Virus record (IMG/VR): IMGVR_UViG_3300020438_000007
Coordinates: 166,740 to 230,739 of that record
Reading direction: 5' to 3' (one strand)
DNA length: 64,000 nt
The first letter of the stretch is position 1, and every line of letters starts with the position of its first letter. Of the stretch, positions 19,309 to 63,290 are shown one piece after another. The translations under genes were made by a program, and so were the position numbers. The notes under the pieces were generated by a model that saw only the letters and a program-made list of their open reading frames with translations, made no database searches and was not told the origin of the DNA.

Positions 19309-19524
19309 TTATAATTGTAGGTTGTATTCAGCAATCATGGCGAACATCTTACTTTGTATATGTTCTAGGTATGATTTGTTGATTGGCGGTATATCCTCAA
19401 ATGTATTAAGATAATCGGTGACAGTGTGATGAAGTATTCTTACCTCTTCAATTCCCATCACCGCCTCACAATGCCAATCACCATCATGAAACTCTTCTGG
19501 TAACCACTCTTCAGGACTTTCCAT
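19309..19524 (-). CDS. hypothetical protein
   Basis: Internal start MESPEEW of the track ORF, overlapping the fibre stop. Confidence 0.65.
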   Translation of the reverse strand: MESPEEWLPEEFHDGDWHCEAVMGIEEVRILHHTVTDYLNTFEDIPPINKSYLEHIQSKMFAMIAEYNLQL

Positions 19525-22500
19525 ATCCACCAGTCTTAAGACTTTCAATTTCATCTTTGAGTTCTTTGATTGCCTCAATCAGTACTGGGACTAACTTCTC
19601 ATATTTAACAGTTAAGTAATTGTCATTTTCTCGTTTAACAACTGCCTCTGGGAAGACCTTTTCTACCTCTTGTGCAGATACGCCGAGGTGTCTACCTTTT
19701 GGTAATCTAAGTTCTCTACCTGTCTCATTAAACTCATATGTAAATCCTCTAAGTTCACATACCTTAGCAACAGCACCTTCAATCTGTTCAAGATTCTGTT
19801 TCAATCTCATGTCAGATGCGAAGGCAGTGATGTCTCCACCAACTGATAGGTTATTGCTACTAGCATTGAATGTTAATCCACCATCTGCCTGTAGTGATTG
19901 ATTACCACTTGAACCACCAAGAATAACATTCTTGCTACCAGATGCACCTCCAATATTAACTTGTGATGCGGAAGCAGCGTTACCAGTGATATTACCACTG
20001 ATACTACTAGCACTAAGGGCAGAAACCGATAAGGTAGTTCCATCAAATGTAAAGTTAGAACTAGATGTAGTGTTGTTGCTTGAAGTGTTATAAGGAACTC
20101 TATTTGCACCAATAGCAATGTTGCTTGCTACTGTTGCAGTATCAGCGTTACCAGCGAATCCACCAGCAGCAGTGAATGTTCCAGTAACCGTTAAGTTATT
20201 AATACTAGAAGAACCAGTGATAGTCGCATCAGCACCTGTGATTCCATCAGGGAAGGCACCAGCACCACCTTGGAAGATACCAGTTGCAGTAATGTCCTTG
20301 ACTTTAGTACTACCATTGGAGTCTCTACCCATGATAGATGCACCACTTGTCCAGTTACTATCAATCATTGATAGTCCATCAAGTAAGTCAGCGTTCAAGT
20401 TTACACACTTAATAGTTGATGATGTCTTAATAGGTGGTACGTTTGTTGCAATAGATTCAAACTGGAATGACTTAATTTGTCCAGCAGGACCTGCATCAAT
20501 ACTCATGTTTGAATTACCACCAGCACTCAGAGCGGTAATAATACCAACGTCAGCGGTGATCTTAGGAGCAGCAAGTCCGTCACCACCAGGCGACATATTG
20601 ATTCTCGCCATTGTCATAGCGAAACCAGTGATACAAGTATAAAGACCAGCGTTAGCAAAGATAGTTAACTGTTCTGACTCTACGCCAGGATTAGGACCAT
20701 ACTTACTACCAATATATCTGGTAAGCATACCATCAGAGTCAACATCATTCGAGAAGTATGCGTCAGGTCCGATTAAGTCATCAGTAAATGTGATGTCTGT
20801 AGATGTAAGTTGATCAATGTTTGCAATTTCAATGTCAGCAGAACCAGTGTTAGGAACTATTAAGTTAGTAATTGTGGCGTTAGTGACTGTCTCGTTAGCA
20901 ATAGTCGCACTGTTTGTTACTTCTAAGTTAGTAGTAATACCTGTGAATACTCTGTTCTCATTGACATATTGTGTGCCCACATGAGATAGAGTTGTAATAC
21001 CAATGTCAGCATACAATCCGTTAGTAACTACACCAACTGTGACGTTCAGATCAGTAATAATACCAGCAGTTGCATACAAATCTTTCTTAACCGAAAGTGT
21101 ATCAATACCAGCGTTGATAGCATTAACAAATGTACCATTGAATGTACCACCTTCACACTCTAAGTTACCAACCTCAAGTGTGCCTGTGATTGTACTTACA
21201 CCTGAGAATGTGGACTTATAAGGTCCCTCAATGTGAATTGCAGATGCAGGCTTGAAGGTTACATAAGTACCAACAAATTCTGCATTGTAAAGTCTAGATG
21301 TACCAGCCTCATGTACCTGTGTATAGAAACCATGTTGTTCCCAAGGGATTCCGTCATAAGAAATACCACCTGTAGTGTTATATCCCCAGAAGTTTGCGTT
21401 CTTCTTGATGACCAATGTGTCATAAGACACACCAGCAAATGACTGGTTAGCAGCGAAGGTAACGATACCTGACACAAACAAGTCTTTGATCTTGGCAACA
21501 CCATTGACCTCAAATGAATCCTTGAAGTTAAATATACCAACACCAGACTGTCCAATACCAATCTGATCAAACCTATAGAATGATCTGTCTCTCTCCTGTG
21601 AAACTGCACCAAATCTTCTCCACTCACCCTCTGCAAAGATATGACCTAAGTATCCACCAGCGTTAGGAACACCAACGAATGAAATATCACCTGATCTTGC
21701 AGCAGTTAATGGTGTAGAGATACCAACTGTGAACACTTTACCCTGTGGGGCATCTCCTCTAAGAGATAGGTTTACAGTCTCAATACCATCTGCGGAAGTG
21801 TTGGTAAGTTTCTCTGTCATGTTGACAGGACCATAGAACTGTGATGTCCTATTGTTATTGTCTCCACCCTCAACTGTGAGTGATTCTCTAATCAATACTT
21901 CATCAAATACACCTGATGCTCTCTTGATTGTCTCTGCTTCAGCATCGTCACCAACATAGGTGAACACTGGCGCTTCAAGAACTTCCTCTTCACCTGTAAT
22001 AGATGATAACTTCTTATATCCTGTGAAGAAGTCTCCAGAGTCGTTCATACCAGTATAAACAACTGTACCACCGTCTAGTTCTTTCTTCTGAGCAGATAAT
22101 GTCTCTTGATCTGAAAGAACTCTATCCTGTTTCTGTGGTAATGATGTTGAGTAGTTTCCTGATCCGTAACCAAGATATTCAAACGTATGACCAGATGCAC
22201 GAAGAATCGAAGGTCTACGAAGTTCCATAGCGAGAACCTTGATCTTCTTGATCGTAGTTCCTGTTATGGCAGATGATGCCAGTGTACCAAACTGACCTCT
22301 AAGAATATTATTAATGTTGTCAGAGGTGAATCTTACGACTTCACCATTGATCATACAGTAGTCTCCTCTTCTGAATCCTTCAGTAGATGAGAGTGTGATG
22401 GTAGTATCAGTAGATGTCAGTGGGGCATTGATTGTGGTAGAAATACCTGTATAGAAGTATGAAGATCTACCAGCAAGATTATTCTCACCAGCACTCAATG

Positions 22501-25500
22501 ACTTACCGTTTGCAGATATACCAGTACCAAACAGTCTGTTGGAAACTAGTGAGTATGATGTATCAATACCAGCAGTGATGATACCAACGTTGAAAGTAAT
22601 ACTTCTAAGTGGTAAACCATCCTCTACACCTTGAACAACTAACTTCCTATCATCAAATAGTGGGTTTCCAGTTCCTTGAATAACAAATGCGTTACCAGCC
22701 ACAAGTGCGTGGTTGTCATCTGTTCTGAGTGTTGAAATTCCTGTCTCTTTAGAGACATCAATATAAGTAACACCAACACCAATGTTTGCTAAGTGATATG
22801 TTGGAACTCTTCTATCGTCTCTATCTGTGAAGTATGGGTCAAGATTTCTCGAAGTTCCAATCTCAACAGAAATAGACTTGGATGAAGGAACATCAACAAT
22901 TTTAAATGTACCGTTTAACTTAGGATCTTCAAAACCAGAGAGGTTCAATCCATCTCCTATATTTGTGAAGATAGATGTAACTGACACCACACCAGCGACA
23001 CTAGGAGCGCCAGCAGGGAATGAAGATACAGTCATGGTATTACCGATACCATATCCACAACCACCATCTAATAGTGATGCACCAGTAATAGTACCAGCAG
23101 CTGAGACTGTGATTTTAGCAGAAGCATTTCTACCAATCAGAGCAGAGTTCTCAAGGTCTGCAGCGTAGATTACAGTTGAAATACCTGATCCATTGTTGTA
23201 TCCAGCGCCAGGATTAACAACACTCAAACCCTTAACAGAGTTGAAGTTATGTTCAACTTCGGTGAATAGAGTAACAGTTGTATTACCTGTACCAGTAATT
23301 ATCGCGCCAGTAGCAGCAAAACCTACCTGTTGCCCCTGCATGAAGTACCCAAGAGACTCTTTGGTGATAGATCTCTTCTTATCACTAGTGATAACTTCAC
23401 CAATAACTGCGGCACTAGCATGAGTGATAGTGGGTTCTGGATCAGACTCGTAGTTGTCTCTATCTTGTTGTGGATATAGATTTCTTACGTCTTGTTGGAA
23501 AGACTTAGTAGATACACCAAATCCAAGATCCTTATCAAGTGGAATAGATGCACAAACCATAGTGATGTTGTACACACCGTCTTGTCCAGATGTGCCAGGT
23601 ACATGAGGTTTGTTCTCTTGTACTCTGTAAACTGTGAAACTATCAACTGCCTTTGATCTTTGAACTGTAGGTAGCGATTCAATCTGTTGTTGAGTAGTTC
23701 TCTGGTTTACCTGATTAAGGAACAGGCCTGGATCTGTACTGATACCAGTGACAGTGAACTTCTTAGTTGAAATAACATTATCAACACCAAACTCACCATT
23801 ATATCCTAACTTGAATGTTCCTAGACTATTGTTGACACTATCAATGTTCCTGATAGTAACAGTGTCTCCTTTCTGTAGTCTATGTGGTTCTTCAGTTGTA
23901 AATGAAATAGTCTGAGCATTATAAGTTGCCGTCTTAACAATTTTGACGTTCTTAAGTTGAGTTGGATTACTTAAGTCTGCACTCAAGAATGATGCACTAC
24001 TTACACCAACTGTCTTAGACTCTTGTAGAATGAAACCAGGCTTAGGAGCACGAGCATTGATATGTTCTTTTGGAATAACATATCTAATTCTATAGAGTCT
24101 GTCGAGTAGAGATCTATTATCAACTCTTCTCTTGAGGAATGTAGTTCCTGTTTCCTCTCCAATCACACCAACACCGATAGTATTGATAGCAGAGAAGATA
24201 GTATTATCAGCAGTGCTTGAAGAACCAGTTAGATACCAACCACCAACTGTGTTAGGAATACTATTAATGGTATAAGTACTCTCATCAAACTGCATTGGGT
24301 GGCCTGGATCGCCAGGATTCTTGTCCGATACAGTAGATCTTATTCTTAACTTACCACCACCATTAGAAATACCAGTAATAGGTCGTCTAGAAGCAGCATC
24401 GTTAAATGTAGATGCTAACTGAATTCTGTCTGCAGCGAGTGTACCACCAGAGATTGCAAAGTAAATCTTATCATTGAAGATACCACTTGGAGTTTCACCA
24501 GTATTACTGAATACTCTGACTTTCTCACCATTTACAAGTTGATGAGCGGTCTTGAACTGGAATACGTTAGAAATAATGGCGTTGACACCAGAGTTTCTAA
24601 TAACCTCATACTCTTTGAATCCAGAAGTTCCGATACCACTAGGAACTTGCATAAAGACAGGAGACTGATAAGTCTCTTGTACTGCCTGTCCAGATAGAGT
24701 ATTAACTAAACTTAGGAATAGTGTATCGTTATTTCTTGCACCAACTTTGAATGAATCAATCTCTGCTGGAGGAACAATCTCTTGGTTGTTATAACCAAAC
24801 AGATAGAATCTATCAGTTACACCAACACCAATGGTTTTTCTAGTATCAATGGTCAACCAAGATACAGTAGAGTCCTCTCTTGTAATCTCTCTTGGTGGAA
24901 TGACGTGAGTGATATAACCAACATCATCTCTGTCGAATGAGTCTGGACGGAAACCTGTAGACTCAAGAGCAGTTTGTCCAAAGTTGGAGTTAGAGTTGGT
25001 AATTGATGCGTCACCGCCTCGTTCTGCATGGAAGTGACGAGCATACGCAATAGCGAACACAGAAACCAACTGAATAACAGAGTTATTCCTAGTCCTCATG
25101 TGAGAGGTTTCAAAATTTGGTTTGTATATCGCCCTTGAGTTAGAGTGTAGTGGTTTATCTGACTCTGATACTGTAGTAGTATCGTTGAATATTGCAGTTG
25201 TAGGGTTGTAAAGTATGAAAGCGTTGTCGTCTTTCTGAATTGAGATACCAGTGAACTGAGCACAAACCATAGATTTGAAACCAGTTGCCTTGTCACCATC
25301 ACAATCCAATCCGTTCATACCGAACACTGATCGGAGTGATACGTTAAAGATGTATGGAGAAGCAGATCCAACAGTATCAGACTCAACTACAATACTAGAG
25401 TTCTGAATTTCTTGTGCAGTTGGTAGTGCATTACTAGGAACATTTGGTGTCTGAACTGTGAACTGAGTACTACTTGAAACTTCATCTACAAGGAACGAAC

Positions 25501-26494
25501 CATTGTAGGAGTTGATTGCAGTTGTAATACCAGCAATTAAAACAGGAGTATCTTTAAATAGTCCATGTGCCTTGTTAGTCTCAATGGTCAGAGTTGCCGT
25601 TGGTGTATTACCATCACCCGCTCTGATAGATGTAACACCAACTGGATCTGCTTGTAAATCACCAACAATTCTAAATTCATCAACACTTGGTTCAAAATCA
25701 TCAAATGTAGGATAGTTTCCAACTGGTCTACCAGATGAGTCTCCGTATGCCTTTGCAACCTTGAAGTAGAACATATCAAGGTCTGTCAATGTACTATCTG
25801 TACCATCGATCAAGACGTTGTTTACACCATCAGCATAAGTAAATGTTGCTAACTTGTGGTGTGAATATGAAGGAGTTTTTCTGTTACTATCATAGTCATA
25901 GTATGCAGTCTTGGTGATATCTGCATCAAAAATAGTGAATGCCGTAAAGTAACAAGTACCAGTAACTCTAAGAACACCACCATATTCCATATCATCATTC
26001 AGAGGATCTGGAACATAAAGAGGTCTAAGTTTGGTTTTACGAAGATCCAAACCAATGATAGATGTACCACGAGGCATGATAGCACCACCTTCGGTACTAT
26101 TATACTTGTACAGTTCGTTATTAGGATCTAAAACATCAAAGTTTGTTTCAGTTGTAAACTGTTCTAATGAAGTTACTTCATATCCAGCGTTCTTTCTGCA
26201 CTTAAATTCTGCGTTGCCACCATTATTTGTGACAGTAAATCCAGGCCTGTTATCAATGTAGTGTACGCCAGGATATGCTAAGATAGTTGTTCTGTCTATC
26301 TTATCGTTATTTTTACCAACCTGATATGAAAATCTTGCAGCCTCAATCAGTGCCCTCTGAATCGTCTTGAAGGGTCTTGTCTGAGAGTTACCTCGGTTTT
26401 CAATACTATCAGTAGCGTCAAAGTCACTTGGGTTTACATAGAGTATATTACCCTCAGCGTTCTTTAGAAAGTTTTCTAATCTTGATAGAGGCAT
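19511..26494 (-). CDS. giant tail fibre / virion structural protein with C-terminal peptidase S74 intramolecular chaperone
   Basis: 2327 aa; MPLSRLENFL...RPFKTIQRALIE N-terminus; GIGVT/GIST repeats; ASDMRLKQN...YEKLVPVLIEAIKEL (S74); late promoter CTAAATA 26527-26533. Confidence 0.9.
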   Translation of the reverse strand: MPLSRLENFLKNAEGNILYVNPSDFDATDSIENRGNSQTRPFKTIQRALIEAARFSYQVGKNNDKIDRTTILAYPGVHYIDNRPGFTVTNNGGNAEFKCRKNAGYEVTSLEQFTTETNFDVLDPNNELYKYNSTEGGAIMPRGTSIIGLDLRKTKLRPLYVPDPLNDDMEYGGVLRVTGTCYFTAFTIFDADITKTAYYDYDSNRKTPSYSHHKLATFTYADGVNNVLIDGTDSTLTDLDMFYFKVAKAYGDSSGRPVGNYPTFDDFEPSVDEFRIVGDLQADPVGVTSIRAGDGNTPTATLTIETNKAHGLFKDTPVLIAGITTAINSYNGSFLVDEVSSSTQFTVQTPNVPSNALPTAQEIQNSSIVVESDTVGSASPYIFNVSLRSVFGMNGLDCDGDKATGFKSMVCAQFTGISIQKDDNAFILYNPTTAIFNDTTTVSESDKPLHSNSRAIYKPNFETSHMRTRNNSVIQLVSVFAIAYARHFHAERGGDASITNSNSNFGQTALESTGFRPDSFDRDDVGYITHVIPPREITREDSTVSWLTIDTRKTIGVGVTDRFYLFGYNNQEIVPPAEIDSFKVGARNNDTLFLSLVNTLSGQAVQETYQSPVFMQVPSGIGTSGFKEYEVIRNSGVNAIISNVFQFKTAHQLVNGEKVRVFSNTGETPSGIFNDKIYFAISGGTLAADRIQLASTFNDAASRRPITGISNGGGKLRIRSTVSDKNPGDPGHPMQFDESTYTINSIPNTVGGWYLTGSSSTADNTIFSAINTIGVGVIGEETGTTFLKRRVDNRSLLDRLYRIRYVIPKEHINARAPKPGFILQESKTVGVSSASFLSADLSNPTQLKNVKIVKTATYNAQTISFTTEEPHRLQKGDTVTIRNIDSVNNSLGTFKLGYNGEFGVDNVISTKKFTVTGISTDPGLFLNQVNQRTTQQQIESLPTVQRSKAVDSFTVYRVQENKPHVPGTSGQDGVYNITMVCASIPLDKDLGFGVSTKSFQQDVRNLYPQQDRDNYESDPEPTITHASAAVIGEVITSDKKRSITKESLGYFMQGQQVGFAATGAIITGTGNTTVTLFTEVEHNFNSVKGLSVVNPGAGYNNGSGISTVIYAADLENSALIGRNASAKITVSAAGTITGASLLDGGCGYGIGNTMTVSSFPAGAPSVAGVVSVTSIFTNIGDGLNLSGFEDPKLNGTFKIVDVPSSKSISVEIGTSRNLDPYFTDRDDRRVPTYHLANIGVGVTYIDVSKETGISTLRTDDNHALVAGNAFVIQGTGNPLFDDRKLVVQGVEDGLPLRSITFNVGIITAGIDTSYSLVSNRLFGTGISANGKSLSAGENNLAGRSSYFYTGISTTINAPLTSTDTTITLSSTEGFRRGDYCMINGEVVRFTSDNINNILRGQFGTLASSAITGTTIKKIKVLAMELRRPSILRASGHTFEYLGYGSGNYSTSLPQKQDRVLSDQETLSAQKKELDGGTVVYTGMNDSGDFFTGYKKLSSITGEEEVLEAPVFTYVGDDAEAETIKRASGVFDEVLIRESLTVEGGDNNNRTSQFYGPVNMTEKLTNTSADGIETVNLSLRGDAPQGKVFTVGISTPLTAARSGDISFVGVPNAGGYLGHIFAEGEWRRFGAVSQERDRSFYRFDQIGIGQSGVGIFNFKDSFEVNGVAKIKDLFVSGIVTFAANQSFAGVSYDTLVIKKNANFWGYNTTGGISYDGIPWEQHGFYTQVHEAGTSRLYNAEFVGTYVTFKPASAIHIEGPYKSTFSGVSTITGTLEVGNLECEGGTFNGTFVNAINAGIDTLSVKKDLYATAGIITDLNVTVGVVTNGLYADIGITTLSHVGTQYVNENRVFTGITTNLEVTNSATIANETVTNATITNLIVPNTGSADIEIANIDQLTSTDITFTDDLIGPDAYFSNDVDSDGMLTRYIGSKYGPNPGVESEQLTIFANAGLYTCITGFAMTMARINMSPGGDGLAAPKITADVGIITALSAGGNSNMSIDAGPAGQIKSFQFESIATNVPPIKTSSTIKCVNLNADLLDGLSMIDSNWTSGASIMGRDSNGSTKVKDITATGIFQGGAGAFPDGITGADATITGSSSINNLTVTGTFTAAGGFAGNADTATVASNIAIGANRVPYNTSSNNTTSSSNFTFDGTTLSVSALSASSISGNITGNAASASQVNIGGASGSKNVILGGSSGNQSLQADGGLTFNASSNNLSVGGDITAFASDMRLKQNLEQIEGAVAKVCELRGFTYEFNETGRELRLPKGRHLGVSAQEVEKVFPEAVVKRENDNYLTVKYEKLVPVLIEAIKELKDEIESLKTGGYGKS

Positions 26495-26551: not shown

Positions 26552-27256
26552 CTATAAAAATATGGCCTGTGTTATCCTATCTACGTCAGTAAATTTACCC
26601 GTATTCATGATTGGAGATTGTAATATGTCAGCAGGAATGATTATTGCCCTATTAAATTTCATACCAAAAGTAAACTCCCTACCCCAAGTAAATTTAGAGT
26701 CATAAACATCTTTAATAATATCAAAATGTTTTTTAGTGGCATACATTGCCTTCATATCTTCAACTACTGAAGTCCTTCCAGCAAAATTCCATAGGTTTGT
26801 TCCACCAAAACATTCTTCCTCATGGTTTAAATATATCTCTATCTTAAATTGGAAAGGCGATGGGTTATGTTCATACCATAGTTGAAAAGGTATGAGTCGA
26901 TCTGGTTGATCTGTCATTGTCTTTTCATTTAGATACTCTACAAGAAACCACATGTATGACATATTTTCGTCAATCGTTGGTCTATCGCATGTTCTGCCCC
27001 AATGTTCATCGTCATGACATATCTGTTTGATCACATGTTCTATATTTTTCCTTAGTTCATCTGTTTGATATGCAGCTCTTTCTATTCCATTAGGGTGATT
27101 ACTAAATGGAATATCTTTTTTTCTATCCAACTTTAAAGCTAATCTTCTAACTTCCTCTGGATTTTCATAAAAATTATCTATGACCATAGCACTCCTACCA
27201 TCTATGCCTATGTCTGTGATGGCAGTAGCTTCTAAATTTTCACTTAATTCAAACAT
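26552..27256 (-). CDS. DUF6445-like protein apparently lacking Fe ligands
   Basis: VIDNFYENP...IYLN..GGTNLW...FNRAIII; HxD and distal His positions not conserved. Confidence 0.7.
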   Translation of the reverse strand: MFELSENLEATAITDIGIDGRSAMVIDNFYENPEEVRRLALKLDRKKDIPFSNHPNGIERAAYQTDELRKNIEHVIKQICHDDEHWGRTCDRPTIDENMSYMWFLVEYLNEKTMTDQPDRLIPFQLWYEHNPSPFQFKIEIYLNHEEECFGGTNLWNFAGRTSVVEDMKAMYATKKHFDIIKDVYDSKFTWGREFTFGMKFNRAIIIPADILQSPIMNTGKFTDVDRITQAIFL

Positions 27257-27437
27257 CTTTGTTCTTTTCTTCCACTAAATGTTCAACTTCTGAGGCAACC
27301 TTACCCATTACCTCTCTTACATCAGTTCCTGATCCAGAGGTATAATAGTAATCTGTTCCTTTCGGAGCATAATGTCTGGTGTGGAGTGTCCAATGCCACT
27401 GTTCAATATTTTTTGAATACCAGAATTGTAATCTCAT
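27249..27437 (-). CDS. hypothetical protein
   Basis: 62-aa ORF; TATAAAT late-type motif at 27448-27454. Confidence 0.65.
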   Translation of the reverse strand: MRLQFWYSKNIEQWHWTLHTRHYAPKGTDYYYTSGSGTDVREVMGKVASEVEHLVEEKNKDV

Positions 27438-27459
27438 GAGTGTTTTAATTTATATAGGA

Positions 27460-27750
27460 GGGGGCAGAGCCCCCACAGTCACTTGGTTAACAAGGAGTGA
27501 CTAATCCCCGATTGCCCCTTAAGCAGCGACGAGTTCGTCAGTGCGGGCAAATTCTCTTGTAAGAATACGAGAGAACGCTACGATGTTATTCGCAGCAGTG
27601 TCAGATGTTTTTGCATCTATGGTTTGCTCTCCGAGCAGGTTTTCAGTCATGTTCCGTATACCCTGTCGAGACCATGGCATCCCCTTGAATGGAGATGAGG
27701 GGAATCGAACCCCTGTCCAGAATGTCGATTACACCACCTACATGTCTTTT
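27460..27750 (-). ncRNA. ssrA: permuted two-piece tmRNA (cyanobacterial type), tag ANNIVAFSRILTREFARTDELVAA*
   Basis: Acceptor piece T-arm AGGGG-TTCGATT-CCCCT + CATCTCC-A (27690-27697); 5-nt spacer TTCAA; 5' strand GGGGATG (27684-27678) giving G3:U70; tag ORF 27593..27519; terminal hairpin GGGGGC-TCT-GCCCCC 27460-27474; 5' boundary approximate. Confidence 0.93.
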
Positions 27751-27767
27751 TGAGTCATACATCAGGA

Positions 27768-28355
27768 CTATACAATCCATTGTATCCAAGAATATCTGGT
27801 TCCTTTTGTTACTGGCATTACTTCATGTGGAAACAAATACAGTGCTGGAAATACTAACACACTTCCCTTCTTTATATTGACAGTGTGTTCCTTCCAAAAC
27901 CTAAACTCACCTCCTTCAAAATCGTCATTCAACACACCTACCACACTAGTAACAGGTATGCCTCTAAATTGTCCTTCAAAGAAATCTCGGATATGATCGT
28001 AGTGTGGACTAAGATAATCGCCAACATCATACTTATTGAATTTTATGCCTGAGCAAGCTTCCCAAAATGAACCGCCAGTTTGATTATCCTCAACGTCATA
28101 ATAATTATATTTTTCGTGGAAGGCATTAAACAACTCATCATTTATATGTGGTTGTATTATATTTACCGCCTCTGGGGCAGTTACGGTTGATTTCATATTT
28201 GATTCTTTATCAATATCAACCTGTTCAAAGTCCTGATACCAAGAAAATTCACCCCATTCACGAGAATCTAAAAGAGATACTATCTGATCACATTCCTGAT
28301 CAGATAGCAAATCATACTCAAATATGTGGTCTTTAAGATTCGGATACTTCAACAT
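27768..28355 (-). CDS. prolyl-4-hydroxylase-like 2OG-Fe(II) oxygenase
   Basis: KYDVGDYLSPHYD...LNDDFEGG...FPA.YLFPHEV.PVTKGTRYS. Confidence 0.9.
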   Translation of the reverse strand: MLKYPNLKDHIFEYDLLSDQECDQIVSLLDSREWGEFSWYQDFEQVDIDKESNMKSTVTAPEAVNIIQPHINDELFNAFHEKYNYYDVEDNQTGGSFWEACSGIKFNKYDVGDYLSPHYDHIRDFFEGQFRGIPVTSVVGVLNDDFEGGEFRFWKEHTVNIKKGSVLVFPALYLFPHEVMPVTKGTRYSWIQWIV

Positions 28356-28563
28356 CTTTCATAGTAGGTTTCTGTTTCAAAACCTCATTGCCAGTTTGTT
28401 TGGAGATAAATGCAGAGAGTTCTGGAGTTTCCTCCCACTCCCAGACTTGATTATTCTGTGGGTTTTTCTTTTGAATCGTGAGTGTGCGTTTTGCCAATTT
28501 CAACCTCTCTAGATAAAACTTCGATTTCATTTTCAAGGCCAATGATCCGAAGTTCTGCATCAT
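28333..28563 (-). CDS. hypothetical protein (WEWEETPEL motif)
   Basis: ORF track; start uncertain because of overlap with 28451..28753. Confidence 0.45.
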   Translation of the reverse strand: MMQNFGSLALKMKSKFYLERLKLAKRTLTIQKKNPQNNQVWEWEETPELSAFISKQTGNEVLKQKPTMKDVEVSES

Positions 28564-28753
28564 TGGCCGATCTTTCTAGAGCCCGTACAGCAGTAGAGAG
28601 TCTTGCGATCTCTGCTCCAAAGGCATCAATATTTTGTAGAAGTAAGTTGTTTCCAAATGTCTGAGGATTCCCCTTCTCCGCATAGGCAGTGTCCTGTACT
28701 TCCTCGCATCTCTTGAGATAATCCTCTTTTGACATTCTATTGTTGTCAGTCAT
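28451..28753 (-). CDS. coiled-coil hypothetical protein
   Basis: 100-aa ORF. Confidence 0.7.
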   Translation of the reverse strand: MTDNNRMSKEDYLKRCEEVQDTAYAEKGNPQTFGNNLLLQNIDAFGAEIARLSTAVRALERSANDAELRIIGLENEIEVLSREVEIGKTHTHDSKEKPTE

Positions 28754-29274
28754 GAGTATTCCATGTAAATGTTTCCAGATATTGTAGTTCCCTCATTGCC
28801 GGAATTAACCATGTGCATGAGGAATGATGGGAATATGATGATACTCCCAGGCTCCAGAATAGGTTTATAGTCTAACGGAAACTGGGGCAAAGTGCAACCA
28901 AAATGGTTCTGAATGTTATGAATCGAAGGATTAAAAAATGCAGTTCTTGATGTCACGTCAACATATATCACATAACTCCATTGACTTTTAGGATGTATGT
29001 GAGCATCTTGATAATCATGTTTCTTATAAACATTTCTCCATATATGTCCAAACCTTGCGTTCTTTCCCATCAGTTCTGCTGGATAGAGATTTCTCTCTAT
29101 TATACCAGACAAATAAACCCAAATTTCCTGTGGAATTTCTTCTTGTTTCTGTGACGAGAAAGTAGATGAAACTCCAGAATCCCAAGTAGGTTCTAAGGGA
29201 GAGAGGGGAATACAATCAAATTTAGTTACATCAACCTGATCTTCAAAGACAGGTATTCCAAAAAGTTGTTTCAT
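28750..29274 (-). CDS. putative 2OG-Fe(II) oxygenase, TIGR02466-like
   Basis: WRNVY..HDYQDAHIHP...WSYVIY...FPSFLMHMV. Confidence 0.85.
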   Translation of the reverse strand: MKQLFGIPVFEDQVDVTKFDCIPLSPLEPTWDSGVSSTFSSQKQEEIPQEIWVYLSGIIERNLYPAELMGKNARFGHIWRNVYKKHDYQDAHIHPKSQWSYVIYVDVTSRTAFFNPSIHNIQNHFGCTLPQFPLDYKPILEPGSIIIFPSFLMHMVNSGNEGTTISGNIYMEYS

Positions 29275-62977: not shown

Positions 62978-63061
62978 TGGGAGAAGAGGGACTCGAACCC
63001 TCACGACATTTCTGCCAACAGATTTTAAGTCTGGTGTGTCTACCGATTCCACCACACTCCC
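62978..63061 (-). tRNA. tRNA-Leu(UAA)
   Basis: Cloverleaf with long variable arm, loop CT-TAA-AA, GGTTCGAGTCC; CCA not encoded. Confidence 0.93.
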
Positions 63062-63064
63062 GAA

Positions 63065-63138
63065 CGACTCAAGTAGGACTCGAACCTACGACCGACTGCT
63101 TAGAAGGCAGTTGCTCTATCCATCTGAGCTATTGAGTC
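63065..63138 (-). tRNA. tRNA-Arg(UCU)
   Basis: ACTGC-CT-TCT-AA-GCAGT anticodon arm; 7-bp acceptor stem. Confidence 0.95.
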
Positions 63139-63141
63139 TGG

Positions 63142-63215
63142 AGCCACTTGTCGGACTTGAACCGACGACCTACGCATTACAAATGCGTTGCTCTATCCAG
63201 CTGAGCTAAAGTGGC
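63142..63215 (-). tRNA. tRNA-Thr(UGU)
   Basis: ACGCA-TT-TGT-AA-TGCGT anticodon arm; U73. Confidence 0.95.
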
Positions 63216-63218
63216 GAA

Positions 63219-63290
63219 TAGGACTACCGAGAATTGAACTCGGTTCACACCGTTATAAGCAGTGGGCATTAACCAATATGCGATAGTCCC
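63219..63290 (-). tRNA. tRNA-Ile(UAU)
   Basis: CACTG-CT-TAT-AA-CGGTG anticodon arm; A73; T-loop GTTCAAT. Confidence 0.88.

What the first reader, a model, noticed from the sequence alone, without database searches (positions are those of the whole stretch)
27519..27593. tmRNA tag is 24 aa, with an internal insertion
Seen: ANNIVAFSR-ILTREFARTDEL-VAA*. From memory, marine picocyanobacterial tags are about 16 aa (ANNIVxFSRxxAPVAA). The N-terminal part and the C-terminal AA degron are retained, but the middle is replaced and lengthened by a charged, helix-like segment. Inference: altered adaptor/protease routing or degradation rate for phage-tagged proteins, allowing the phage to redirect proteolysis.
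Basis: partly seen in the sequence, partly recalled or inferred. Interest (0 to 1): 0.68.

Follow-up and report, generated by a model that had tools for sequence, protein, structure and literature searches.

The report
Cyanophage tmRNA with an extended tag
A marine cyanophage carries its own copy of the host's ribosome-rescue RNA (tmRNA), and its tag-coding part was lengthened by two in-frame changes, one of them an extra RNA hairpin, so the tag is most likely 31 residues where the host's is 16.

Summary
The window is from an S-SSM7-like cyanomyovirus. At 27460-27762 (-) it holds a two-piece (permuted) cyanobacterial-type tmRNA (ARAGORN; Rfam RF01851, 109 bits).

Host tags are uniformly 16 residues. 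The canonical pattern occurs in 338 of 401 genomes of the host family, and the phage-type junction in 0 of 401.

Phage tmRNAs form one clade apart from the hosts. Within it the long tag marks one nested, well-supported clade, so the 8-codon insertion arose once. It is not merely a peptide insert. It duplicates the F-S-R-coding strand and adds its reverse complement, forming an extra stem-loop. The second copy pairs with sequence after the stop codon. Covariation supports this (98.5% of cells paired, about 40% in slid controls).

Metatranscriptome contigs cover the coding piece. The phage encodes no SmpB, ClpP or ClpS.

Cyanophage tmRNAs were already listed in a survey; the tag architecture was not found described. 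Whether the longer peptide changes proteolysis cannot be decided here.

The parts
27460..27762 (-). Two-piece (permuted) cyanobacterial-type tmRNA gene, whole Rfam match; the ARAGORN call with flanks is 27428-27779
   Evidence: RF01851 109 bits (cut-off 70), RF04321 85.8 bits, ARAGORN tmRNA*
27690..27740 (-). Acceptor piece: 5' strand of helix 2, T-arm (GGUUCGAUUCC), 3' acceptor strand CAUCUCC and discriminator A at 27690. CCA is not encoded.
   Evidence: Read against the Rfam alignment. The acceptor stem pairs with 27684-27678 and includes a G3-U70 wobble.
27685..27689 (-). Short intervening segment (UUCAA) between the acceptor piece and the coding piece, presumably removed in processing
   Evidence: Metatranscriptome contig X17 record 9 ends exactly at 27684.
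27612..27614 (-). Most likely resume codon GCA (Ala), preceded by A-U-A-G-A-U with A at -4
   Evidence: Extension-less phage tmRNAs have the same upstream context directly before A-N-K-I-V. PMC2481249 reports that A86 (-4) sets the frame in E. coli.
27594..27614 (-). Seven-codon N-terminal extension (A-K-T-S-D-T-A), not seen in the hosts searched. It looks like a degenerate tandem duplicate of the tag start. Its 5' part forms a small hairpin with -4..+1.
   Evidence: Some relatives read A-N-N-I-D-T-A here. Compensatory AGAUG/CAUCU to AUCUG/CAGAU.
27567..27593 (-). Core A-N-N-I-V-A-F-S-R, shared with host tags.
   Evidence: Across 34 unique phage reading frames, changes by codon position are 0, 1, 5.
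27543..27566 (-). Lineage-specific 24-nt (8-codon) insertion I-L-T-R-E-F-A-R
   Evidence: Alignments. Present only in the long-tag clade.
27551..27576 (-). Extra stem-loop: the F-S-R codons pair with the inserted A-C-R-A-G-A-G-A-A around a U-N-N-U tetraloop. The window has one C-A mismatch; S-SSM7 is perfect.
   Evidence: z -4.3 for the window, -6.3 for S-SSM7; apical pair seen as G-C 7, A-U 5, C-G 3.
27512..27550 (-). Tag-enclosing helix: the second F-A-R strand (UUGCCC, 27550-27545) pairs with post-stop GGGCAA (27517-27512). It encloses the apical hairpin GACG-AACU-CGUC, the tail T-D-E-L-V-A-A and the stop codon at 27519-27521.
   Evidence: three columns of the outer helix and three of the inner helix carry double compensatory changes; 100% and 97% of cells are paired.

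Best explanation
This is a functional, phage-borne copy of the host's two-piece tmRNA. It is charged with alanine by the host synthetase (G3-U70 is present) and must work with host SmpB, because the phage has none. It would rescue ribosomes stalled during infection and add a tag that resumes at GCA 27614 and runs 31 codons to the stop at 27519. The tag is longer than the host's 16 residues because of two in-frame changes to the RNA. The first is a 21-nt extension just after the resume codon, shared by most marine cyanophage tmRNAs found here. The second is a 24-nt insertion that arose once in the S-SSM7-like lineage. The insertion duplicates the strand coding F-S-R and adds its reverse complement. 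The first copy now closes a new stem-loop, and the second copy keeps the old pairing with the sequence after the stop codon. Shown: the gene, its structure with covariation, the single origin of the insertion, no such tag in the hosts searched, and presence in RNA libraries. Inferred: the start site, activity in trans-translation, and the idea that selection acts mainly on keeping the reading frame base-paired while frame, stop codon and a host-like C-terminal degron are preserved. One possible benefit of the pairing is protection from single-strand-specific RNase E, which is induced during cyanophage infection. On this view the middle of the peptide is largely a tolerated by-product.
For: Gene identity. 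Relatives: S-SSM7 and S-SSM6a share the tmRNA region at 95% identity; S-CAM1, S-CAM3, Sf-FS3 and AG-345-P14 share the conserved part. The linker from the upstream hairpin is 11 nt in the phage and 12 nt in the host. The same context directly precedes A-N-K-I-V in extension-less phage tmRNAs. Translation of the frame: the core varies almost only at third codon positions. All length variants keep the frame and an Ala/Val-rich end. There are compensated -1/+1 indels (A-N-N-I-D versus A-K-T-S-D; T-R-E-F versus T-E-K-L in L102). Structure: (98.5% of cells paired versus 38-50% when slid; 8 pairs with double changes versus 0-2). Single origin: the long-tag clade has 100/99 and 100/100 support on trees built without the tag columns. 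Hosts. RNA: contigs from two metatranscriptome studies cover 27516-27684 and 27478-27671 and, beyond the tmRNA, only 27354-27518 and parts of 28098-28400 of the 1.8-kb stretch. No SmpB, ClpP or ClpS in the 99%-complete phage record. RNase E background: PMC3113571, PMC9692554.
Against: No peptide, ribosome-profiling or end-mapping data exist, so the start codon and activity are predictions. Most pairs of the new stem-loop never vary, one stem position (C of CGU against the third base of codon 19) is mismatched in 9 of 15 unique variants, and 3 of 18 aligned sequences break the covarying apical pair. Second codon positions in the insertion almost never change (9, 1, 8 changes by position) and positions 17-18 stay hydrophobic, which also fits peptide-level selection. 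The RNase E protection idea is untested. Logan contigs cannot show RNA ends or levels, and DNA carry-over cannot be fully excluded. The first viral sample was chosen with a pattern that included the extension's last codon; the second, tag-independent scan corrected this only in part.
Confidence: 0.55

Rival explanations
1. One reading: the added charged segment is selected as a peptide. It would change how tagged proteins are recognised by an adaptor, by ClpXP versus other proteases, or how fast they are degraded, so the phage redirects proteolysis.
For: Frame, stop codon and a hydrophobic C-terminus are always kept. Second codon positions in the insertion rarely change and residues 17-18 stay hydrophobic. 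Most long-tag variants end in V-T-A or A-T-A rather than the host's V-A-A, which could tune recognition. Hosts searched lack any such tag. A second, independent long tag of 29 residues exists in other phage contigs.
Against: Nearly all inserted bases are paired and covary at the RNA level. Residues change freely where the RNA compensates (A/S, D/S/T, V/A, T/R). T-R-E is dictated by complementarity to the F-S-R codons. No phage-encoded adaptor or protease was found. No SspB-type adaptor is known to me in cyanobacteria (from memory, not tested).
Confidence: 0.2
2. Translation resumes at the reader's GCG (27593), so the tag has 24 residues and the 21 nt upstream are an untranslated spacer.
For: In hosts the resume codon is the first codon of the G-C-G-A-A-C / G-U-U-C-G-U hairpin. 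The homologous phage hairpin spans codons 7-13. The extension varies much more at the residue level than the core. ARAGORN's choice of resume codon is heuristic: it called V-T-A-N-N-I-V in some hosts.
Against: The base at -4 is U or C there in 64 of 64 cases, and mutating the -4 A to a pyrimidine inactivates or frameshifts E. coli tmRNA (PMC2481249). The linker from the upstream hairpin would be 32 nt instead of about 12. The extension never carries a stop codon or a net frameshift, and -1/+1 indels are compensated. Both Rfam models align the canonical resume position to 27614.
Confidence: 0.12
3. The RNA is a decoy or a decaying copy. It would bind host SmpB or ribosomes without productive tagging, as proposed for the TLD-only tmRNA of mycobacteriophage DS6A.
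For: It scores far below host tmRNAs on the Rfam model (109 against 274-326 bits). No phage SmpB. The decoy idea for DS6A is cited in PMC4131195.
Against: The reading frame, stop codon and Ala/Val-rich end are conserved across all 84 phage tmRNA tags read. Core variation is synonymous, the helices covary, G3-U70 and the T-arm are intact, and the long-tag clade is diverse yet keeps the same architecture.
Confidence: 0.05
4. The region encodes a small protein, as annotated in the GenBank records of S-SSM7 and S-SSM6a; the equivalent window ORF is 27519-27680, 53 residues.
For: An ATG-initiated ORF in the tag frame exists, and 'hypothetical protein' CDS features cover it in both relatives.
Against: The upstream two thirds of that ORF is the tRNA-like domain and helix 2, conserved at the nucleotide level with host tmRNAs. 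Strong RNA-family scores and covariation explain the conservation.
Confidence: 0.02

Closest known systems
Two-piece (permuted) tmRNA of marine Synechococcus/Prochlorococcus (Rfam RF01851 cyano_tmRNA)
   Same: Permuted gene order, T-arm, G3-U70 acceptor stem, helix 2, hairpin before the resume region, A at -4, tag core A-N-N-I-V-x-F-S-R, Ala-Ala end in the window, and F-S-R codons pairing with post-stop sequence.
   Different: It scores about a third of the host bit score. The tag is 31 codons, not 16. It has a 21-nt extension after the resume codon and a 24-nt extra stem-loop. The host's Q-x-A-P segment is replaced. It sits in a phage genome without smpB.
Other phage-encoded tmRNAs: S-SSM7, S-CAM1, S-CAM3 and S-CRM01 listed as 'permuted' in Table S1 of Buchholz et al. 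2022 (PMC9004378); mycobacteriophage Bxz1 group and Bacillus phage G (PMC4131195)
   Same: Phage-borne ssrA without a phage smpB is an established observation. S-SSM7 and S-SSM6a carry the same long-tag tmRNA at 95% identity.
   Different: Those papers list the genes and discuss presence, phylogeny or a riboswitch. I found no description of the tag sequences or of this insertion. No glnA-type riboswitch reached threshold in the window.
E. coli tmRNA resume-region rules (U85/A86 and the -1 triplet; Miller et al. 2008, PMC2481249)
   Same: A at -4, a purine at -3 and U at -1 before GCA. A weak helix joins the upstream bases and the first codons, as noted for E. coli positions 85-90 and 95-100.
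   Different: Different lineage and a two-piece architecture. The rule is transferred by analogy and was not tested in cyanobacteria.

Membership tests
Cyanobacterial two-piece tmRNA (RF01851 / RF04321) | Covariance-model score above the curated cut-off over the full model | tested here: met
   109 bits against 70, model positions 1-288; RF04321 85.8 bits against 47. Phage relatives score 109-143 bits.
Cyanobacterial two-piece tmRNA (RF01851 / RF04321) | Permuted order: the 3' acceptor strand and T-arm lie upstream of the 5' acceptor strand and coding part | tested here: met
   ARAGORN calls 'tmRNA*'. T-arm at 27718-27690, coding piece from 27684.
Cyanobacterial two-piece tmRNA (RF01851 / RF04321) | Alanine identity: G3-U70 wobble in a 7-bp acceptor stem | tested here: met
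   GGGGAUG (27684-27678) pairs with CAUCUCC (27697-27691) with G3-U70; read. The fifth base pair of the stem differs between phages but stays paired.
Cyanobacterial two-piece tmRNA (RF01851 / RF04321) | Tag reading frame opening with an Ala codon, with the conserved A at -4, and ending at a stop codon within the tag-enclosing helix | tested here: met
   AUAGAU|GCA at 27614. The stop codon at 27519-27521 lies inside a covarying helix.
Cyanobacterial two-piece tmRNA (RF01851 / RF04321) | Expressed and processed into two RNAs | tested here: inconclusive
   Contigs from metatranscriptome studies P11 and P12 cover the coding piece, and one ends exactly at 27684. Contigs cannot prove RNA ends, strand or the absence of DNA.
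Cyanobacterial two-piece tmRNA (RF01851 / RF04321) | Works with SmpB in trans-translation | not testable with these tools
   No SmpB in the phage record; it would have to use the host protein.
Host-type picocyanobacterial ssrA tag | 16 residues, A-N-N/K-I-V-x-F-S-R-Q-x-A-P/L-V-A-A | tested here: not met
   The window tag has 31 residues (24 at the least) and the Q-x-A-P segment is replaced.
Host-type picocyanobacterial ssrA tag | C-terminal hydrophobic-Ala-Ala end of the kind recognised by ClpXP in E. coli | tested here: met
   The window ends in L-V-A-A, identical to the last four residues of host variants. This is sequence only; recognition was not tested. Most clade members end in V-T-A or A-T-A.

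The most novel reading that the evidence does not exclude
Marine cyanophages have turned the host's ribosome-rescue RNA into a phage-specific version. Its reading frame is almost fully base-paired through added hairpins. It writes a modular, phage-only tag: an N-terminal extension plus lineage-specific inserts, which arose at least twice. Together these would let the phage RNA survive the infection-induced RNase E attack that removes host RNAs, and would mark rescued proteins differently from host-tagged ones so that their fate (speed or route of degradation) is under phage control.
Probability: 0.15. Interest if true: 0.7.

Novelty: new variant of a known kind. Interest (0 to 1): 0.42.

Why it matters
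Why phages carry tmRNA at all is unresolved. This family offers a natural series within one clade: tags of 14, 21-23, 29 and 31 residues, with or without the extension and the extra hairpin. With it, the RNA-level and peptide-level roles of a tmRNA reading frame could be separated experimentally in a cultivable phage-host pair (S-SSM7 on Synechococcus WH8109). It also shows that the tmRNA is missing from the GenBank annotation of S-SSM7 and S-SSM6a and is covered there by a spurious CDS. Finally, it is a clear example of amino-acid changes in a tag that accompany RNA-compensating substitutions.

Tried and rejected
1. Peptide-level tandem duplication (F-S-R-T-R-E twice) as the origin of the insertion. 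Nucleotide identity between the halves is weak. The inverted-copy (hairpin) model fits better, because S-SSM7 has a perfect 11-bp stem.
2. A promoter or terminator for the tmRNA. No sigma-70-like site was found on the minus strand in 27250-28000, so it may be co-transcribed with the upstream 2OG-Fe(II) oxygenase gene.
3. Phage-encoded partners. SmpB, ClpP and ClpS were not found in the whole 230.7-kb record. SspB was not searched.
4. Host lineages with long tags. Host tmRNA hits with long spans (315-376 nt) all carry 16-residue tags; the extra length lies elsewhere. Seven tmRNA-positive genomes that missed the canonical pattern also have 16-residue tags. The second, weak tmRNA-like hits in three host genomes are degenerate copies, not long-tag genes.
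5. Literature on these tag sequences: no paper holds the core peptide strings.
6. Codon-position counts as proof of peptide selection. They are suggestive only (9, 1, 8 in the insertion), not corrected for phylogeny, and confounded by the tetraloop.
7. ARAGORN's second 'tmRNA' call in Sf-FS3 (L003 1124-1541) overlaps tRNA genes and was ignored.
8. Structure prediction, complex prediction and the big protein searches were not used, because the object is an RNA and a short peptide.

Full report
What is there. The window is the last 64 kb of a 230.7-kb IMG/VR virus record, 99% complete by CheckV. It matches Synechococcus phages S-SSM7 and S-SSM6a (Kyanoviridae, Lipsvirus) at about 85% identity over 83% of a 20-kb stretch. 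ARAGORN finds a permuted tmRNA at 27428-27779 on the minus strand. Rfam's cyano_tmRNA model matches 27460-27762 end to end at 109 bits (cut-off 70), and tmRNA_permuted scores 85.8 bits. Read from the sequence, the T-arm and 3' acceptor strand lie at 27718-27690. A 5-nt spacer follows, and the coding piece begins with GGGGAUG at 27684. That strand pairs with CAUCUCC and includes the G3-U70 wobble that defines alanine identity.

The observation. Four lines of evidence favour the earlier start.
In 35 of 35 host tmRNAs it is A before the accepted start. In E. coli this A (A86) is the nearly invariant, principal determinant of the frame, and pyrimidines there inactivate the RNA or shift the frame (PMC2481249).
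- The linker from the conserved upstream hairpin to the start is 11 nt in the phage and 12 nt in hosts.
- Phage tmRNAs that lack the extension have the same context, ACAGAU|GCA, directly before A-N-K-I-V.
- The extension never contains a stop codon or a net frameshift. A-N-N-I-D and A-K-T-S-D versions differ by a compensated -1/+1 pair of indels.

Against this, the hairpin that opens with the resume codon in hosts begins at codon 7 in the phage. ARAGORN's heuristic is also fallible: it called V-T-A-N-N-I-V in some hosts. I put about 0.8 on 31 residues. Only peptide data can settle it.

Hosts. All 35 host tmRNAs recovered from a scan of one genome per species carry 16-residue tags. Among 151 genomes drawn evenly from the host's family, 129 have a full-length cyano_tmRNA match. 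The 17 with the longest spans also carry 16-residue tags. A pattern for the canonical 16-residue tag matches 338 of 401 family genomes, the same share as have any tmRNA hit. Seven tmRNA-positive genomes that miss the pattern have 16-residue variants such as ...A-L-V-A-A. The phage-type junction (an Ala codon followed by A-N-N-I-V-A/V-F-S-R) occurs in 0 of 401.

Phage relatives. Blast finds the tmRNA in S-SSM7, S-SSM6a, Sf-FS3, S-CAM1, S-CAM3 and the single-cell virus AG-345-P14. None of the six records I fetched (S-SSM7, S-SSM6a, Sf-FS3, S-CAM1 NC_020837, S-CAM3 NC_031906, AG-345-P14) annotates a tmRNA there. Under the match there is either no feature or a 'hypothetical protein' CDS. Two scans of IMG/VR gave 82 further contigs: one with a tag-core pattern and one with a tag-independent pattern from the tRNA-like domain. 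The tags fall into modules:
- no extension, 14 residues;
- a 6- or 7-codon extension with a host-like tail, 22-23 residues;
- an extension with short tails S-T-V-A-A or T-R-E-L-A-T-A, 21-23 residues;
- the long form of 31 residues (one of 32);
- a different long form of 29 residues.

On trees built without the tag columns, phage tmRNAs are one clade apart from hosts (100/100). The 31-residue form is one nested clade (100/99; 100/100 with 23 unique sequences). The 29-residue form is a separate clade (100/84). The window's insertion is therefore derived and arose once, and tags lengthened at least twice. The freshwater phage S-CRM01 has a 19-residue tag without the extension.

Anatomy of the insertion. 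Relative to the 23-residue forms, the long clade has 24 extra nucleotides after the F-S-R codons. In S-SSM7 these include an exact reverse complement of the preceding bases, giving a perfect 11-bp stem with a UUCU loop. The window has one C-A mismatch (z-scores -6.3 and -4.3). T-R-E is thus the reverse-complement reading of F-S-R. In the short forms, the F-S-R codons pair with G-G-G-A-G-A just after the stop codon. In the long clade that pairing is taken over by the second copy, the F-A/S-R codons. Three columns there show double compensatory changes (U-A/C-G, G-C/U-A, C-G/A-U), and these changes alter Ala to Ser at codon 23. The apical pair of the new stem appears as G-C, A-U and C-G, which links the I/V/L choice at codon 17 to the third base of codon 18. 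The older apical hairpin (GACG-AACU-CGUC in the window) covaries too. Over 18 sequences, 98.5% of cells are paired, against 38-50% when the partners are slid. Eight pairs have changes on both sides, against 0-2 in the slid controls. The small hairpin joining -4..+1 to codons 3-4 also shows compensation in two phage contigs. In the long clade the frame from codon 7 to the stop is folded into consecutive helices.

Is the frame translated? The core varies almost only at third codon positions: 0, 1, 5 changes by position over 34 unique frames, and 0, 0, 3 within the long clade. All length variants differ by whole codons and keep an Ala/Val-rich end. A second compensated frameshift, T-R-E-F to T-E-K-L, occurs in L102, and that variant also appears as a loose end of an RNA-library contig. 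This argues against a decoy or a decaying gene.

Expression. Of the runs holding this DNA, six are RNA libraries. In two metatranscriptome studies the contigs on the 1.8-kb stretch cover the coding piece (27516-27684 and 27478-27671). Beyond it they cover only 27354-27518, just downstream of the tmRNA, and parts of 28098-28400. One contig ends exactly at the predicted 5' G of the coding piece. Contigs cannot prove ends, strand or level, so this counts as supportive only.

Mechanism. The phage encodes no SmpB, ClpP or ClpS, so the RNA must use host factors. The most likely role is ordinary trans-translation during infection. The lengthening appears to be driven mainly by RNA structure, under the constraint that frame, stop codon and degron-like end survive. 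Why more pairing would help is inferred, not shown. RNase E is induced by cyanophage infection and spares duplex RNA (PMC3113571, PMC9692554), so a fully paired reading frame could outlast the host's.

Novelty. Phage tmRNAs, including those of S-SSM7, S-CAM1, S-CAM3 and S-CRM01, are listed in a published survey (PMC9004378). An earlier census knew only mycobacteriophages and Bacillus phage G (PMC4131195). I found no description of these tags or of the insertion. It is a new variant of a known kind and of moderate interest.

Limits. The first viral sample was selected with a pattern containing the last codon of the extension. Backbone branches inside the phage clade are unresolved. Variation counts are not corrected for phylogeny.

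Noticed in passing
window 62978-63290 (-): Cluster of four tRNA genes: Leu-TAA, Arg-TCT, Thr-TGT and Ile-TAT. In Sf-FS3, S-CAM1 and S-CAM3 the tmRNA sits next to tRNA genes; in this window it lies 35 kb from the cluster.
   Followed up: no
L001 1561-1779 (S-SSM7 SSSM7_025) and L002 1618-1779 (S-SSM6a CYVG_00208); window ORF 27519-27680 (-): The public records of S-SSM7 and S-SSM6a do not annotate the tmRNA and place a 'hypothetical protein' CDS over it. That CDS is the tag frame extended upstream into the tRNA-like domain.
   Followed up: partly
L144 1063-1408 (+), L149 2575-2920 (-): An independent long tag of 29 residues (...F-S-R-P-F-S-K-V-A-K-R-D-L-V-A-V) in a separate phage tmRNA clade. 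The expansion lies inside the tag-enclosing helix, with a different architecture from the window's.
   Followed up: partly
L135, L146, L147, L150, L152 (viral contigs): Phage tmRNAs without the N-terminal extension, with 14-residue tags ending in A-V-A-V. They sit on very long branches in the tree.
   Followed up: partly
L154, L140, L044 compared with their neighbours in the tree: Tag tails do not always follow the RNA body: a T-R-E-L-A-T-A tail on an S-CAM-type body, and an S-T-V-A-A tail on an Sf-FS3-type body. This suggests exchange of tag modules between phage tmRNAs.
   Followed up: no
L104 201-495, L105 201-437, L106 236-382 (host genomes G017, G010, G040): Second, degenerate tmRNA-like copies in three picocyanobacterial genomes. 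One lies 3 kb from the intact gene and one lacks the T-arm. They may be remnants of island integration at ssrA.
   Followed up: partly
window 27768-28355 (-) and 28750-29274 (-); 19511-26494 (-): The tmRNA follows two 2OG-Fe(II) oxygenase-family genes (Pfam PF13640 and PF13759). Downstream of it lies a 2327-residue tail-fibre gene. RNA contig X20 spans the end of the first oxygenase gene and the acceptor piece.
   Followed up: no
window 27522-27619, run X19 record 11: A metatranscriptome contig carries the S-SSM7-type variant of the tag (six differences, including the change that gives V-T-A). Both tag variants are therefore present in environmental RNA libraries.
   Followed up: no
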